The notes: generated from the letters alone by a model not told the origin. A stretch of DNA of 64,000 nt from Salpingoeca rosetta (GCA_033442325.1 JAWQFM010000005.1:1595171-1659170), one strand, 5' to 3'. Positions 5,667 to 11,158 are shown, numbered from the stretch's first letter. A program made the numbers and translations.

Positions 5667-8600
5667 ATGATGAGCTCAGCAGACCACGATGCCGTGGGCT
5701 CGTTGCAGGAGCCGCTGTTGGGTGTGGATGAGGAAGCGGGGGTAGCAACAGGGCTGGATTCGCCGACGATGGCGACAAAGTACAGTGAGGAGGGGCGGGA
5801 GCGCAAGGGGTCGACGGCGGCAAACGCGGAGAGCGTCGTTGAGTGGCTGCAGGCTGTGGACACGGCGACGGTGCTCCGATTCCTGAAGGATGTCCTGAAG
5901 GAGACGCTCATCATGGCAGCACCATTCAACGTCCCGAGCACAAGCAATTCGGAAGCAGATGAGGTCAACACTGGCCTTCGCCAGCTGCGGGGTTCTTACC
6001 TGACCACCTGGCTCATCGTACACATCACTGTCAGCGTTCGCAAGTGGCTCTGGACCTCGGAAGCGTTCCGTACGTTTGCATTTCGTTGTGTGTGTATGTG
6101 TGTATGTGTGTGTGTGACTGTGTGTGCGTGTGTGTGACTGTTTGTCCGTGTGTAGATACATCTGTGTGTCCATTTAACCGTCCGTCCGTCCGTCCAGGTG
6201 TGTGTCTGTGTGCTTCTGCTTGTGTACGTGGATGTGCATGCACCCGTGTCCTCTGGTGGATCAACTTTCCATCTCCTCTAGATGTACCGACCTGCTTCTC
6301 ACCTTGTAGTGACTTGCGCACAGTGTCCATCTTCAGCCTGTACTGGCTCTATTTGCTGTGGCTCGTTATCCTCAGCATCGTGTACGGACAGGCGCAGTGC
6401 GATGACACTGTCATTCCCACCTTTGGCGTTAATCTCCACTGTCAAACCGCGAACATCTCGGAGTTCAACCCGGTGAAGAACTTCAGCATCGGATATGACG
6501 ATGTCTGCCCCTTTGGCCTCAACGCGACCCGTGTGACCACCACGGTCATCATACCAACCTGTGGGCTGACGGCGGGCGAAATCGAGCTCTTCGAAACGCG
6601 CCAAGGTATTGCGACTGCCCATCCATCCATCGATGCTTGCTGTGCACGCCCAACCTCTCGAGTACTCCGGCATTCTGCCACGTGTACACAAGTGTTCTTG
6701 GTTGCAACACCTTCCCTGACACACACACACACACACACACGCGCGTGCGCGCGCGCAAAACTTCTGCCATCGCTGTTCTGTTCGCACACACCAGAGGCTG
6801 TATCCGGCGAAGTTGGGAGTGCCATCACTTTTGGCTTCATCGCGTCCGCCTTCATGGTCTACGTGCTGATGTGAGCCCACGTGCGAAGCCTTGAAACGGG
6901 GCTAGGGGCTGCTACAGCTTGGTCATCACATCAAACCAAACCACACATGCAGACGGATACAACACACGCACCCAGACACCCCGGGCAAATGCCCACACGC
7001 ACACCTGCACATGTGCACCGAGATGCGCTTGCACACAGAACCCTTCGCTCATGTTCACTCATCCACGTCTGCACGCGCACAGGAACCGTGGCGAGTTTTT
7101 GTCCAAGACGCCAACCAGCGTGCTTGTGTCGCTGTGCAAAGGCCTCGGCCGCGGCACATTCATGGTCAGCTACTCGTGGACGGGCGAAACGCTCGTGCCT
7201 GCACGCAGCGTCGCGTCGTTGTTTGAGGATGGCCGGTGCTGGGTTGACGTGCAGAACATTTTGCCAGGCGCCTCCATTCAGGACGTGTGCACGACGGCAG
7301 CAGCCAACGCGCAAGTGGCGTTTGTGTTTCTGACACCAGAGTACCTCGCATCGCACAACTGCTGCCTGGAGCTCCTCAACTTTGAGCCACGGTGCGCAGG
7401 TGTGCTGGCAGAGCGCTTTGGATGGACAAACGACATTGCCACCGACACGTCAACAGCTGGGATGCATGCAAAACCGCACGTGCAAGGCACCTCAGACCGT
7501 GAAGATGGCGACCGTGATGGCGATGATGATGATGACGATGAAGGTGGTGATGATGGCAATGATGACGATGGCCAGGGAGGTACCAGTGACAAGATGCCAG
7601 CCGGTGGCGATATGGCGCTGCGCATGTCTGAGCTGCTGCGGCGGAAGCGAGGGGAGCCCTCTGCAAAACTCATCGTCTTTGTCACTGATGAAGTGTTTGA
7701 TGATGAGCAGCACACAGAACAGGTGCGGCATGCCTGGAAATTCGTTTCGTGTGTGTGTGTGTGTGTGTGTGTATGTTTGTGTATGTGCTTGTGTGTGTGT
7801 GTGTGTATGTTTGTGTATGTGCTTGTGTGTGTGTGTGTGTGTGTGTGTTGTGTGTGTGTGTGCTTTTGAGGTGATTGCGTTGATGTGTGGAAGCTGGCCA
7901 CAGTATTCCCGTATTCCAGGCTGCACTGAGCTCATCCACGGGACAACGTTTACACAACACCCTCGCAGCGAATTGCGTTTCATCGCCGCATTGTGTCGCT
8001 GCTGCAGCGCCACGACCACTACGTAACGTTCGAACGAGACAATATCCTCAAGTACCTCAACTACCGACCAAACAGGTGTGTTGGTGGGCATTGCTCCTTG
8101 TCCATTGCCACAGTGCTAGTTTTCTTCCGCACACACTCGCTTTACACACACACACACACACACACACACACACACACACACACACACACACACACACACA
8201 CACACACACACAGGATTGTGCTGCAGACGCTGATCAACAGCGGTGCGCTTCTCCACGCGCTGCGCACACAGGCTGTAACGCCGGCCGTCAACGAGGGCTG
8301 GCAGGCAACTGCCTTTGCCATCGTTCGTGGGGTGCGTACGTGTGTTGTGGATGTCCGTACATGTGCGTGTGGTGCGAGGTGCGGGGGTGTGTATGCATAT
8401 GAGGTTGAACGTACGTGTGTTTCAGTCTTTGGGCTTGCCTCTTACTGCCGTACGTGCTGACTTGCTCGTGTACTGCTCCTTTGTATGTGCAGTGGCGCAT
8501 CAACACAGTCTACATGCTTCCTCTCATTGGCGGCCTCAGTACGAGCACACCACCAGCTTGCTTGCTTGTGTGCGTGCGTGTTTGTGCGTGCGTGTTTGTG

Positions 8601-11158
8601 CGTGCGTGTTTGTGCGTGCTTGGCTGTCTGCCTGTTTGTGTGAGGTATTGGGCTGGGGTGTAAGTATGTAGGTTGCAAGCTGTTTCTCCACCTGCTCAGC
8701 TTTCATGTGTTTGCGTGTTTGATGCAGCGAGCGCAATCTCCCTCGGCCTAAACGATCGAACCAACGGCCTCCTTGGCGGCATCTATGCGGGCATCTACTT
8801 TCGTGCGTCGGCCTTAACTTGCTTGTGCCAACCCTAAGCTTGCTCGCACCCTCACTCACTCAGTCACTCACTCACTCACTCACTCACTCACTCACTCACT
8901 CACTCACACACTCAGTCACTCACTCACTCACACTCTTCACTGTGCTGTGTAGTTGCTGCATCGTCGCTGATGGTGTGGCTTGCCTCGGCCCTGCGTGGCA
9001 CGGGCCGATACATCGGTTACGCCGCGCAGATTCTCTTCTTCCCCTTCTTCCGCTCCATTGGCCGCTCGCGACGGTTTGGCGCACTGCCAGACATCGCCCA
9101 CCTCACCACCATCCTCACCCGCTTGCACGTGTCCAAGCGCCTCGCTGTGTTTGTCAGCCAAAACGCCCCCACAGACCTCAGGGAAGCGCTGACCCTCCTT
9201 GAAAGGTGCGACTGCCTTGCATACTTGTGTGTGTGTGTGTGTGAGTGTGTGTGTGTGTGTGTGTGTGTGTGTGTGTGTGTGTGTGTGTGTGTGTGTGTGT
9301 GTGTGTGTGTGTATGTGTGTGTGTCCGTCTTGTCTGTCTGTCTGCTTTGTCTTGCCTTGTCTTGTTTGTCTGTCCGCCTGTCTGTGTGGGCATATGCGCA
9401 CCTCGCGGCTCTTTGAATACCTCTGCCTCTCACTGCCCCCCTGTTTCTTTGTCTCTCCATACCTTGCCATGTTCCTCGTCTCATTCTCACTTGCCCGTGT
9501 CCCCCGTCACCACCGCAGCTACAAGGTCGTTGATCTCGCCGCAGACCCGGCGCTTGCAGATTTCTCCTTCATCTGTCTTGATAAGAACACGGACAAGCAC
9601 CGCTTCAAGCTGCTTGGCGGCCACAGGCAGGGTATGTGGAAACGGGATGGTGTATGGATGTGTGCCAGCGCATGCTTGCTCAGTTACGTGTGCGTGGTGA
9701 CCAAGTATGCTTCTCTGTGCACTTGTGGTTTTACAGGCCATGCTATTCGTCAGGGTTGCATTCATTTTCATGACTTGCACGCTAGAACCCTGCTTCATCT
9801 GAGCACCCTTCTGACATACACATGCGCCCATGCAACTTGCACTGCAGGTGACGTTGAGGTTGATGTTCCCGAGGTACTGGATGCTTCGGGCGCCACTGTC
9901 TACTGGACAACAGCGCCTTACGACGAAATCCTGTGCGTGACACACGCACGCACACATAAGCACACACGCATGCGCACACGCACACACACGCGCGCACACA
10001 CAAAACACATGCACACACATACACGCACCTACACGCATGCACGCACCCATACGCATCCACATGCGCAACTGCGACACATTGCATTACTCAACGTCTCATA
10101 GCAAGTTGTGACCCCATGCTGGATCCCACAACAGGAAACGCAAACCGAAGAACGTGCGCAAGGCCTTTATCAAATGCGGCACGCCCCCAAAGTGCGCTCC
10201 TGTTGCTGCTGCGGCTGTTCTTGGTGGTGTCTTTCCTGGTTGGCTTGCAGCCGCGCACTCTCTCGCAACACACACACACACACACACACACACACACACA
10301 CAAGCGCGCATGTGTGCGACACAACCCACTCAAACCGACACGCACGCGCACACGCTCACCCCAATCCGTGATATGCGTACTTGCGTGCACATCCGGTCGC
10401 CACCAGACTTGAGACGGTGCTGGTGCAGCTGATGAAGCGAGGCCTTGGACTTCCGCTCAGCGCGGGCGTGACTGTTGGCCGCCGCCCCTTCAAGAACATC
10501 GACTTTGAAATCCAAAGCGCAAAACAGCGCGTCCTCCACACCTTCTCAAAGGTTCGCGCACTGCATCGCGCGCGCGCGCGCGTGTGTGTGTGTGTGTGTG
10601 TGTGTGTGTGTGTGTGTGTGTGTGTGTGTGTGTGTGTGTGTGTGTGTGTGTGTGTGTGTGTGTGTGTTTGTGTGCTGATGTGTGTGTGTTTGTGTTTGTG
10701 TGTTTGTGTGCTGATGTGTGTGTGTGTGTGTGTTTGTGTCTGTCTGTCTGTTTGCTGGCATACATGCTTTGCTCACACGAGTGTCTTCCAACTGACCCCC
10801 CCCCCCCAAAACTCACACACACACACATACACAACTTGCGTAGAGCGCGTTTGGGAGCCGATTGCGCACACACAAAGAGCAGTTTGTGACGGCGACAAAG
10901 ACGGCTGTGGTGCAGCCGTTCCAAGAAGGGCAGAGGGCGGTTGCCGGCTTTGCGTGGACAGGAAAGAGTGGAACAGGCACAGCTGATGGTGGTGATGGTG
11001 AAGTTGCTCATGGTGATGGCTATCATGACCATGGTGATGGTGATGGTGATGGTGATGGTGATGGTGATGGTGATGATGCGAGCGCTGCATCGCGACAGCA
11101 ACAAAGGCACGGCGGCGGTAGTGATGGCGACGGGCAATTCGGGGATTCGCGCGTGTAG
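5667..11158 (+). CDS. Multi-pass membrane protein with an internal TIR (TIR_2-type) domain
   Basis: About 14 phase-compatible exons. Order: TM1 (IFSLYWLYLLWLVILSIVYG), Cys-containing loop with NIS/NFS/NAT sequons, TM2 (AITFGFIASAFMVYVLM), TIR motifs FMVSYSW...CWVDVQNILPGASIQD...VAFVFLTPEYLASHNCCLEL (~7150-7380), then further hydrophobic segments (~8490-9050) and a polar tail ending DSRV*. Confidence 0.75.

What the first reader, a model, noticed from the sequence alone, without database searches (positions are those of the whole stretch)
5667..11158. Membrane-embedded TIR protein with an unusual topology (TM - glycosylated Cys loop - TM - TIR - more TMs)
Seen: two TM helices flank a loop with Cys residues and N-glycosylation sequons. 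They are followed by a TIR_2-type domain that keeps the S-x-x-C-x-x-E-L motif (SHNCCLEL), then an acidic insert, further hydrophobic helices and a tail. No LRR or Ig ectodomain is visible, so this is not a TLR/IL-1R. Established: this Glu is catalytic in NAD+-cleaving TIRs (SARM1, plant TIRs, bacterial ThsB). Inference: it may be an undescribed receptor-like or pore-coupled enzymatic TIR in a unicellular relative of animals.
Basis: partly seen in the sequence, partly recalled or inferred. Interest (0 to 1): 0.8.

Follow-up and report, generated by a model that had tools for sequence, protein, structure and literature searches.

The report
Four-pass membrane TIR protein family
This is a real, expressed 14-exon gene for a 904-residue membrane protein that holds a complete TIR domain, with its catalytic glutamate, between two pairs of membrane helices; it belongs to an unstudied family found in choanoflagellates and other protists.

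Summary
Spliced RNA contigs from two studies carry the whole coding region as one transcript. They fix a 14-exon, 904-aa model.

Order of parts:
- N-terminal tail
- TM1
- 78-aa acidic loop with 4 conserved Cys and 3 N-x-S/T sequons
- TM2
- TIR domain (Pfam TIR_2, 36.7 bits against a cutoff of 28) split by a 72-aa acidic insert
- TM3 and TM4, joined by a 6-aa loop
- a roughly 190-aa alpha/beta C-terminal domain
- an Asp/Gly-rich tail

Charge distribution fits the tail, the TIR and the C-domain being cytosolic. The Glu of SHNCCLEL (Glu350) is invariant in 27 relatives and aligns with the catalytic Glu of Cat1 and Roq1.

The gene is one member of a family. About 46 of 54 longer hits show two hydrophobic helices before the TIR and usually two or more after it. 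Named members come from five choanoflagellates, Rhodelphis and Pterocystis. The long Cys-rich loop occurs only in two choanoflagellate subclades.

The C-domain has no Pfam match and only a generic flavodoxin-like fold (Z up to 6). I found no paper on this architecture.

My best reading is a membrane-anchored TIR enzyme that processes NAD+. Nothing supports a pore.

The parts
5667..6069 (+). Exon 1: ATG, cytosolic N-terminal tail (aa 1-133) and first residue of TM1
   Evidence: First start codon after an in-frame stop. The RNA contigs cover 5672-6069, and the X5 contig runs unspliced from 5465. The donor at 6069|GT joins to 6324 in the X4 and X5 contigs.
6324..6605 (+). Exon 2: TM1 (to 6388) and most of the Cys/sequon loop (from 6389)
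   Evidence: Junctions 6069>6324 and 6605>6795 in spliced contigs. Hydropathy peak of 2.17 at aa 133-151; 4 Cys and 3 sequons.
6795..6870 (+). Exon 3: end of the loop and TM2 (6812-6870)
   Evidence: Junctions 6605>6795 and 6870>7083. Hydropathy peak of 1.93 at aa 235-253.
7083..7722 (+). Exon 4: TIR strands A-C and helix C (7129-7413), including the SHNCCLEL motif and the Glu350 codon (7369-7371); acidic insert (7414-7629); TIR strand D
   Evidence: Pfam TIR_2 at 36.7 bits. The Glu is invariant in 27 relatives and aligns with the catalytic Glu of Cat1 and Roq1. Insert composition.
7969..8075 (+). Exon 5: C-terminal part of the TIR fold (helix D, strand E)
   Evidence: Junction 7722>7969 in raw reads and contigs. 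In the homologue model the TIR fold spans both sides of the insert (Z 12.7, 141 of 146 residues of the IL-1RAcPb TIR).
8214..8331 (+). Exon 6: helices after the TIR, with the conserved P-x-x-N-x-x-W-x-x-T motif before TM3
   Evidence: Motif from the family consensus.
8493..8538 (+). Exon 7: first part of TM3
   Evidence: Junctions 8331>8493 and 8538>8728 in raw reads and contigs. Hydropathy.
8728..8802 (+). Exon 8: end of TM3 (to 8750), 6-aa loop NDRTNG, start of TM4 (from 8769)
   Evidence: Junctions 8538>8728 and 8802>8953..
8953..9205 (+). Exon 9: end of TM4 (to 8987), Arg-rich juxtamembrane helices, start of the C-terminal alpha/beta domain (from about 8997)
   Evidence: Junctions. Six Lys/Arg and no Asp/Glu in aa 595-625. 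Conserved L-P-D motif.
9519..9631 (+). Exon 10: C-terminal domain
   Evidence: Junctions 9205>9519 and 9631>9848.
9848..9932 (+). Exon 11: C-terminal domain (conserved Y-W-T/S motif)
   Evidence: Junctions 9631>9848 and 9932>10135. Alignment.
10135..10191 (+). Exon 12: 57-nt exon that sequence inspection missed; C-terminal domain
   Evidence: Junctions 9932>10135 and 10191>10407 in raw reads of two runs and in both contigs.
10407..10551 (+). Exon 13: last conserved part of the C-terminal domain (to about 10521)
   Evidence: Junctions. 58% identical to P0002 in this segment.
10844..11158 (+). Exon 14: Asp/Gly-rich low-complexity tail and TAG stop (11156-11158)
   Evidence: The contigs join 10551>10844. 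Raw-read depth continues to about 11220. Tail composition.

Best explanation
The gene encodes a four-pass membrane protein built from two helical hairpins.

Predicted topology (inferred from charge, sequons and Cys; not proven):
- The N-terminal tail, the TIR domain and the C-terminal alpha/beta domain face the cytosol.
- The 78-aa loop between TM1 and TM2, with four cysteines and three N-glycosylation sequons, faces the lumen or the outside.
- So does the 6-aa loop between TM3 and TM4.

Shown: the TIR is a complete TIR fold interrupted by a disordered acidic insert between helix C and strand D. It keeps the glutamate that is catalytic in NAD+-cleaving TIRs.

Most likely mechanism (inferred, not shown): the protein is a membrane-anchored NAD+-processing TIR enzyme, either an NADase or an ADP-ribosyl cyclase. 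Activity would depend on TIR self-association in the plane of the membrane. Tethering by two hairpins would hold the TIR in check or fix its location. In the choanoflagellate subclade the enlarged disulfide-bonded ecto-loop may provide a sensing surface. The conserved flavodoxin-like C-terminal domain may be a regulatory or ligand-binding module.

Shown: it is one member of an uncharacterised eukaryotic family that shares the order TM hairpin, TIR, TM hairpin, C-domain.
For: - One transcript, all junctions GT-AG, RNA on the + strand; 904-aa in-frame model.
- TIR_2 above the gathering cutoff.
- The family profile hits solved TIRs: Cat1 at 4e-9, PdTIR at 2e-6, Roq1 at 4e-6, plus TLR1/2/6, TIRAP, MyD88 and RPP1. 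The family's C-x-x-E-L aligns with the catalytic Glu motif.
- The AlphaFold model of the 39%-identical full-length homologue P0002 (pTM 0.70) matches whole TIR domains across the insert: IL-1RAcPb Z 12.7, TIRAP 12.2, SARM1 11.3.
- Five columns are invariant (W, Y, S, C and E) in the alignment of 27 relatives.
- Positive-inside pattern: 2 Lys/Arg before TM1; 10 Asp/Glu against 3 Lys/Arg in loop 1; 2 Lys/Arg after TM2; 6 Lys/Arg and 0 Asp/Glu after TM4.
- Four loop Cys conserved in the nearest relatives.
- 46 of 54 longer hits have at least two hydrophobic peaks before the TIR, and most have two or more after it.
- The post-TIR module is recovered by iterative search in more than 30 hits.
- Published context: many eukaryotic TIRs that carry this Glu make cADPR when expressed in E. 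coli (preprint 10.64898/2026.04.20.719644). A transmembrane helix is needed to tame the Dictyostelium TirC NADase (PMC13142454).
Against: - No enzymatic test exists for any member. A conserved Glu is also found in some TIRs that act mainly as adaptors.
- Both structure models are of the homologue P0002, not of the window's protein, because a spliced protein could not be handed to the tools.
- TM calls rest on hydropathy and AlphaFold helices with pLDDT of only 60-80. The second hairpin has a 6-aa loop and Gly/Ser-rich helices, so it could be re-entrant rather than spanning.
- Expression is low: 1-8 reads deep in about a quarter of two large runs.
- The C-domain fold match is generic (Z up to 6).
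Confidence: 0.6

Rival explanations
1. Non-enzymatic scaffold. The TIR serves only as a protein-protein interaction module, as classically described for TLR, MyD88 and TIRAP. It would recruit other TIR proteins, of which this genome has many, to a membrane. The conserved Glu would be structural.
For: The highest structural Z-scores are to adaptor or receptor TIRs: IL-1RAcPb 12.7 and TIRAP 12.2. The single-sequence PDB search puts TIRAP first among TIRs. Earlier notes of this scan record many other TIR proteins in the genome (unchecked).
Against: W, Y, S, C and E are invariant across 27 divergent members spanning distant eukaryotic groups. That pattern, centred on the catalytic Glu motif, is what enzymatic TIRs show. 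Z-scores to SARM1 (11.3), TIR-1 (9.9) and Cat1 (9.3) fall in the same range, so structure does not separate the two readings.
Confidence: 0.25
2. Self-contained signal-and-effector unit. The TIR makes a nucleotide signal, or senses oligomerisation, and the four TM helices of an oligomer then open or disrupt the membrane. This would be analogous to bacterial TIR systems whose products activate separate membrane-spanning effectors.
For: Two TM hairpins are conserved next to the TIR across the family. A conserved flavodoxin-like domain follows the second hairpin and could bind a ligand. Bacterial Thoeris types use membrane effectors triggered by TIR products (preprint 10.64898/2026.04.20.719644).
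Against: The TM segments contain no charged residues (polar residues and their conservation were not examined). The whole-model structure search found no match to any channel or pore-forming fold. No family member has been tested. Four helices per chain work equally well as a plain anchor.
Confidence: 0.1
3. Gene-model artefact: the TM parts and the TIR part belong to separate neighbouring genes, or the TIR exon is a pseudogene fragment.
For: None beyond the many repeat-filled introns, which make prediction from sequence alone risky.
Against: One spliced contig spans 5672-11019 in runs from two studies. Length bookkeeping accounts for every exon, and stranded raw reads cross 9 junctions. The full-length homologue P0002 aligns from aa 104 to 820 in the same order.
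Confidence: 0.02

Closest known systems
Salpingoeca rosetta PTSG_10286 (XP_004988336) and PTSG_13047 (XP_004988823), annotated 'hypothetical / TIR domain-containing protein'
   Same: Same family and same clade in the TIR tree (support 99/96). They are 33% identical over the TIR, second hairpin and C-domain, with the same S-x-N-C-C-x-E-L motif.
   Different: PTSG_10286 as annotated starts at the TIR and has no first hairpin. PTSG_13047 has a 32-aa first loop with one Cys and no sequon. Neither accession appears in the searchable literature.
Toll-like receptors and IL-1 receptor family
   Same: A membrane protein with a cytosolic TIR. The TIR fold of the homologue superposes on IL-1RAcPb at Z 12.7.
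   Different: No signal peptide followed by an LRR or Ig ectodomain. There are four hydrophobic helices instead of one. The TIR lies in the middle of the chain between two hairpins, and a further folded domain follows it.
SARM1 / TIR-1
   Same: TIR fold (Z 11.3 and 9.9) with a Glu at the catalytic position.
   Different: No ARM or SAM domains. This protein is membrane-integral. By profile the TIR is no closer to SARM1 than to plant or bacterial TIRs.
Dictyostelium TirC (membrane-tethered TIR NADase, PMC13142454)
   Same: The idea of an active TIR NADase restrained by a transmembrane tether in a unicellular eukaryote.
   Different: TirC has one N-terminal helix and a recently transferred bacterial TIR. 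Here there are two hairpins, an ecto-loop, a C-terminal domain and a wide eukaryotic distribution. Sequences were not compared because no TirC sequence was on hand.
Bacterial defence TIRs (Thoeris ThsB, Cat1, TIR-SAVED, TIR-STING)
   Same: The best profile hit among solved structures is Cat1 (E 4e-9), with the catalytic motif aligned.
   Different: No PADLOC model matches the window's TIR exon, and homologues reach only E 0.003-0.005 on a SAVED-TIR model. No NCBIfam model comes near its cutoff. The sensor domains are absent, and the gene is eukaryotic with 13 introns.
Raw / OLRN-1 (two-TIR cADPR hydrolase, PMC13455253)
   Same: A membrane-associated protein with a TIR plus a second alpha/beta domain. 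The C-domain model aligns weakly to TIRAP (Z 5.6).
   Different: A profile comparison of the C-domain with the family's own TIR gives probability 0.15%. Receiver and cobalamin-binding domains score as well as TIRAP. No death-domain-like modules are present.

Membership tests
TIR domain superfamily (Pfam TIR_2, PF13676) | Profile match above the curated gathering score | tested here: met
   36.7 bits against 28, E 6.7e-9, profile positions 1-72 of 122 on exon 4. The remainder of the domain lies beyond the insert and in exon 5.
TIR domain superfamily (Pfam TIR_2, PF13676) | Complete five-stranded flavodoxin-like TIR fold | tested here: met
   Tested on the model of the homologue P0002 (57% identical in the TIR core), not on the window protein itself. 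Z 12.7, rmsd 3.3, 141 of 146 residues of the IL-1RAcPb TIR; Z 11.3 to the SARM1 TIR.
Enzymatic (NAD+-cleaving) TIRs | Glutamate on helix C at the catalytic position | tested here: met
   Glu350 in SHNCCLEL. It is invariant in 27 relatives and aligned to the E of Cat1 'CWDEL' and Roq1 'CLEEL'.
Enzymatic (NAD+-cleaving) TIRs | Measured NAD+ turnover dependent on that Glu | not testable with these tools
   Needs a biochemical assay.
Toll-like receptor / IL-1 receptor | LRR or Ig ectodomain and a single transmembrane helix before a C-terminal TIR | tested here: not met
   No LRR or Ig Pfam match in any exon ORF. The only extracytosolic segment is a 78-aa loop. There are four hydrophobic helices and about 400 aa after the TIR.
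SARM1 | ARM repeats and tandem SAM domains N-terminal to the TIR | tested here: not met
   No ARM or SAM match in the window ORFs or in ten homologues.
Bacterial defence TIR families (PADLOC, NCBIfam models) | Match to a ThsB, SAVED-TIR, STING-TIR or similar model | tested here: not met
   No PADLOC hit for the window exon; homologues reach only E 0.003-0.005. NCBIfam gives FxsC_Nterm at 16.9 bits against a cutoff of 130.
Protist 'hairpin-TIR-hairpin' family (defined here) | Two hydrophobic helices before the TIR and two or more after it | tested here: met
   In the window protein the peaks are at aa 133, 235, 547 and 572. 46 of 54 longer hits have at least two peaks before the TIR.
Protist 'hairpin-TIR-hairpin' family (defined here) | Signature F-M-V-S-Y-x-W ... 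C-W-x-D ... P-G ... Y-L-x-S-x-N-C-x-x-E-L | tested here: met
   Present in the window protein. W53, Y87, S90, C93 and E96 of the alignment are invariant.
Protist 'hairpin-TIR-hairpin' family (defined here) | Conserved post-TIR module and C-terminal alpha/beta domain | tested here: met
   Iterative search seeded with aa 468-800 recovers more than 30 hits. Alignments A3 and A4. Domain model pLDDT 85.
Raw-type two-TIR proteins | A second TIR domain | tested here: inconclusive
   hhalign of the C-domain against the TIR profile gives probability 0.15%. Structurally TIRAP at Z 5.6 is tied with receiver and B12-binding domains at Z 5.5-6.0.

The most novel reading that the evidence does not exclude
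The family is an ancient eukaryotic single-chain counterpart of bacterial TIR signalling systems. The TIR would make a nucleotide second messenger at a membrane. The attached flavodoxin-like domain, of a fold class that includes nucleotide- and phosphoryl-sensing modules, would read that messenger or another ligand. The two TM hairpins of an oligomer would then act as the effector, for example by altering membrane permeability. In choanoflagellates a disulfide-bonded glycosylated ecto-loop would have been added as an external sensor.
Probability: 0.1. Interest if true: 0.85.

Novelty: new variant of a known kind. Interest (0 to 1): 0.6.

Why it matters
TIR domains are now known to be enzymes in bacteria, in plants and, by recent reports, in many animals and protists. 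A recent atlas of eukaryotic TIRs states that several eukaryote-only TIR clades are wholly uncharacterised (PMC13142454).

This gene gives one such group a concrete anatomy backed by RNA evidence. A catalytically equipped TIR is fixed between two membrane hairpins and followed by an undescribed folded domain. The arrangement is conserved from choanoflagellates to Rhodelphis and a centrohelid.

If the TIR is active, the family would be a membrane-localised source of NAD+-derived signals, or of local NAD+ depletion, in the closest relatives of animals. That bears on how receptor-type TIR signalling arose. The S. rosetta paralogues make it testable in a tractable choanoflagellate.

Tried and rejected
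- My first splice model had exon 2 starting at 6282 and lacked the 57-nt exon. RNA corrected both. A second in-frame option, 6043|6310, was also rejected by the RNA.
- The search for homologous proteins returned only the query itself in all three searches: full-length P0002, its TIR region, and alignment A1. Low-complexity words probably swamped the word index. The window's own annotated protein was therefore never retrieved, and the spliced 904-aa protein could not be passed by reference to the Pfam, structure or database tools. Whole-protein analyses used the homologue P0002 or single exons instead.
- The protein atlas gave nothing for exon 9.
- The single-sequence PDB search was weak, with TIRAP at E 0.5. 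The family profile was needed.
- Foldseek on the whole model and on the C-domain gave no hit at E <= 0.001.
- I tested whether the C-domain is a second TIR. Profiles do not support it and structure is non-discriminating.
- Pfam finds no family for the C-domain in any of 22 members.
- The supplements of the two 2026 TIR preprints did not list the S. rosetta or EukProt members, and one file was truncated. The cADPR-producing S. rosetta TIR in that screen is a different 1352-aa protein.
- No paralogue lies elsewhere in the window.

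
Full report
**1. What is in the sequence**

The region is eukaryotic coding DNA broken by short introns, nearly all of them filled with (TG)n or (CA)n microsatellite. Of the ORFs that carry the candidate exons, only one has a significant Pfam match. That is TIR_2 (PF13676) at E 6.7e-9, 36.7 bits against a gathering score of 28, covering profile positions 1-72 of 122. From reading frames and GT-AG sites I built a 13-exon in-frame model running from the ATG at 5667 to the TAG at 11156-11158.

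**2. RNA evidence**

Sixteen public runs of the same organism hold the stretch or part of it. Eight of them (X4-X11) hold only about 40% of its words, as expected for spliced RNA. I laid two raw stranded RNA-seq runs (X17, X18) and two such contig sets (X4, X5) on 5450-11400.
- One contig per set (2601 nt in X4, 3545 nt in X5, from different studies) crosses the whole gene. The X4 contig starts at 5672, the X5 contig at 5465, and both end at 11019.
- Eleven GT..AG joints are listed. The other two (8075>8214 and 10551>10844) follow from the contigs' own coordinates: 238 nt lie between contig positions 1504 and 1743, and positions 2393 and 2394 are adjacent.
- The RNA changed my model in two places. 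Exon 2 begins at 6324, not 6282. An extra 57-nt exon lies at 10135-10191.
- Raw reads cross nine of the junctions. They lie almost entirely with the first mate on the minus strand, which in the usual stranded protocol means the RNA is on the + strand.
- Depth is low, about 1-8 reads in roughly a quarter of each run.

The corrected model has 14 exons, 2715 nt and 904 aa with a single terminal stop. The refutation test 'TM and TIR parts are separate transcripts' therefore fails. They are one mRNA.

**3. Anatomy of the protein**

| Residues | Feature |
|---|---|
| 1-133 | Hydrophilic N-terminal tail |
| 134-156 | TM1 (Kyte-Doolittle 19-residue peak 2.17) |
| 157-234 | Loop: 10 Asp/Glu against 3 Lys/Arg; Cys160, 174, 196, 214; sequons at N178, N187, N201 |
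| 235-254 | TM2 (peak 1.93) |
| about 270-364 | TIR strands A to C and helix C, including SHNCCLEL at 344-351 (Glu350) |
| 365-436 | Insert with 21 Asp/Glu and 13 Gly in 72 residues |
| 437 to about 505 | Rest of the TIR |
| about 505-544 | Helical linker with a conserved P-x-x-N-x-x-W-x-x-T motif |
| 545-565, 572-594 | TM3 and TM4, joined by NDRTNG |
| 595-625 | Arg-rich stretch: 6 Lys/Arg, no acidic residue |
| about 598-790 | Folded C-terminal domain |
| 801-904 | Asp/Gly-rich tail |

The charge distribution obeys the positive-inside rule for a topology with the N-terminus, the TIR and the C-terminal domain in the cytosol and both loops outside. The sequons and cysteines are then on the side where they can be used. 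This topology is inferred, not shown.

**4. Relatives**

A full HMMER scan of 1.84 billion cluster representatives with exon 4 gave 75 proteins at E <= 1e-3 and 11 at E <= 1e-10.
- P0002 (837 aa, a EukProt transcriptome protein) aligns with the window protein from aa 104 to 820 at 38.7% identity, E 4e-172. It has the same order of parts, including four loop cysteines and sequons.
- Named members are S. rosetta PTSG_10286 and PTSG_13047, Diaphanoeca grandis, Salpingoeca urceolata, Mylnosiga fluctuans, Rhodelphis limneticus, Pterocystis sp. and an MMETSP transcript.
- Unnamed members sit on eukaryote-like contigs, one of 2.2 Mb and one next to a telomerase gene, as intronless genes.
- An iterative search seeded with aa 468-800 recovers the post-TIR module in more than 30 hits.
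- Hydropathy shows at least two peaks before the TIR in 46 of 54 longer hits, and usually two or more after it.
- In most members the first hairpin loop is 2-30 aa with no Cys. An 80-127 aa loop with 4-10 Cys and sequons is found only in the window's clade and in the Diaphanoeca, S. urceolata and MMETSP clade.
- A maximum-likelihood tree on 114 TIR columns places the window protein with P0001, P0002 and the two S. rosetta proteins (support 99/96). This clade is sister to a second choanoflagellate clade (91/85).
- The best S. rosetta matches are only 33% identical overall, so the window is from another choanoflagellate-like species. The tools hide its name.

**5. Is the TIR a real and possibly active TIR?**

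In an alignment of 27 members, W, Y, S, C and E of the motif C-W-x-D ... Y-L-x-S-x-N-C-x-x-E-L are invariant. The profile of that alignment finds solved TIR domains:
- Cat1 at 4.2e-9
- Paracoccus PdTIR at 2e-6
- Roq1 at 4e-6
- TLR1, TLR2 and TLR6, TIRAP, MyD88, RUN1, RPP1, AbTIR and others

In those alignments the family's Glu pairs with the Glu of 'CWDEL' in Cat1 and 'CLEEL' in Roq1. From established knowledge of plant and bacterial TIRs, that is the catalytic glutamate.

An AlphaFold2 model of P0002 built on a 52-row family alignment reached pLDDT 72 and pTM 0.70, with the TIR and C-domain above 90. An all-against-representatives structural search aligned residues 216-500, which span both sides of the disordered insert, with complete TIR domains:
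- IL-1RAcPb: Z 12.7, 141 of 146 residues
- TIRAP: Z 12.2
- SARM1: Z 11.3
- MyD88: Z 10.6
- C. elegans TIR-1: Z 9.9
- Cat1: Z 9.3

Foldseek agrees on the first half (probability 1.00, weak E-values because of the long query). The TIR fold is therefore complete, and the insert sits between helix C and strand D. Activity itself is not shown.

**6. The C-terminal domain**

Modelled alone on a 22-row alignment it gives pLDDT 85 and pTM 0.78, with alternating strands and helices.
- The best structural matches are all generic flavodoxin-like domains at Z 5-6: the B12-binding domain of a mutase (6.0), TIRAP (5.6) and many CheY-type receivers (5.0-5.6).
- Foldseek and the ESM Atlas give nothing specific.
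- No Pfam family matches any of 22 members.
- A profile-profile comparison with the family's own TIR gives probability 0.15%.

I describe it as an undescribed domain of flavodoxin-like fold. Whether it is a very degenerate second TIR cannot be decided here.

**7. Comparison with known systems**

- It is not a TLR or IL-1R: no LRR or Ig ectodomain, and it is not single-pass.
- It is not SARM1: no ARM or SAM domains.
- It matches no bacterial defence TIR model.
- The literature held here does not describe the architecture. Richter et al. 2018 list choanoflagellate TLRs, Kinase-TLRs, Kinase-TIRs, SARM1 and cytosolic TIR combinations.
- The TIR survey of 2020 mentions only single-span receptors.
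- A 2026 atlas states that several eukaryote-only TIR clades are uncharacterised.
- A 2026 screen found cADPR-producing TIRs in protists including S. rosetta, but the tested protein is a different one.
- The S. rosetta accessions of this family appear in no searchable paper.
- Functionally the nearest idea is Dictyostelium TirC, an NADase kept harmless by a transmembrane helix.

**8. Verdict**

It is an uncharacterised multi-pass membrane TIR protein with the catalytic Glu. It is also a member of a broadly distributed protist family, and its Cys loop is a choanoflagellate elaboration. Nothing supports a pore.

My confidence in the best reading, a membrane-anchored NAD+-processing TIR enzyme regulated through the membrane and by the attached domain, is 0.6. 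My own estimate for the architecture alone is about 0.9.

The TIR domain itself is well known, but this architecture and its C-terminal domain are undescribed, so I rate it a new variant of a known kind, interest 0.6.

Noticed in passing
window 6082-6145, 7740-7868, 8140-8212, 9220-9320, 10560-10740, 11227-11340: Almost every intron of this gene, and the DNA just after the stop codon, is filled with long (TG)n or (CA)n microsatellite. These create many spurious Cys/Val or His/Thr ORFs on both strands.
   Followed up: no
window 8563-8609 (intron 7): RNA reads pile up on a roughly 45-nt GC/TG-rich word (25-50x in raw reads). They have loose ends on both sides and a fixed T>G at 8582. The reads come from a highly expressed transcript elsewhere that shares the word, not from this intron.
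   Followed up: partly
window 7517-7540 and 10984-11001: An apparent back-joint 11001>7517, with 17 foreign letters and an A>G at 7532, comes from another mRNA that has the same (GAT GGT)-type Asp/Gly repeat. The acidic TIR insert and the C-terminal tail share this repeat.
   Followed up: partly
window 5450-5648 and ORF 4154-5083 (-): There is opposite-strand transcription just upstream of the start codon: X17 reads with the first mate on +, and an X4 contig on the minus strand at 5465-5590. It probably belongs to a divergently oriented neighbour whose 309-aa ORF lies at 4154-5083. I did not analyse that gene.
   Followed up: no
L001:1-6900: The intronless family member P0086, on an ENA metagenome contig, lies directly behind four tandem copies of a 1767-bp unit. 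Each unit carries three small ORFs of 76, 61 and 92 aa.
   Followed up: no
window 45990-47052: An earlier first-reader note on this same window reports a PLC-gamma-type enzyme with an unsplit PH domain. It is unrelated to this gene and I did not examine it.
   Followed up: no
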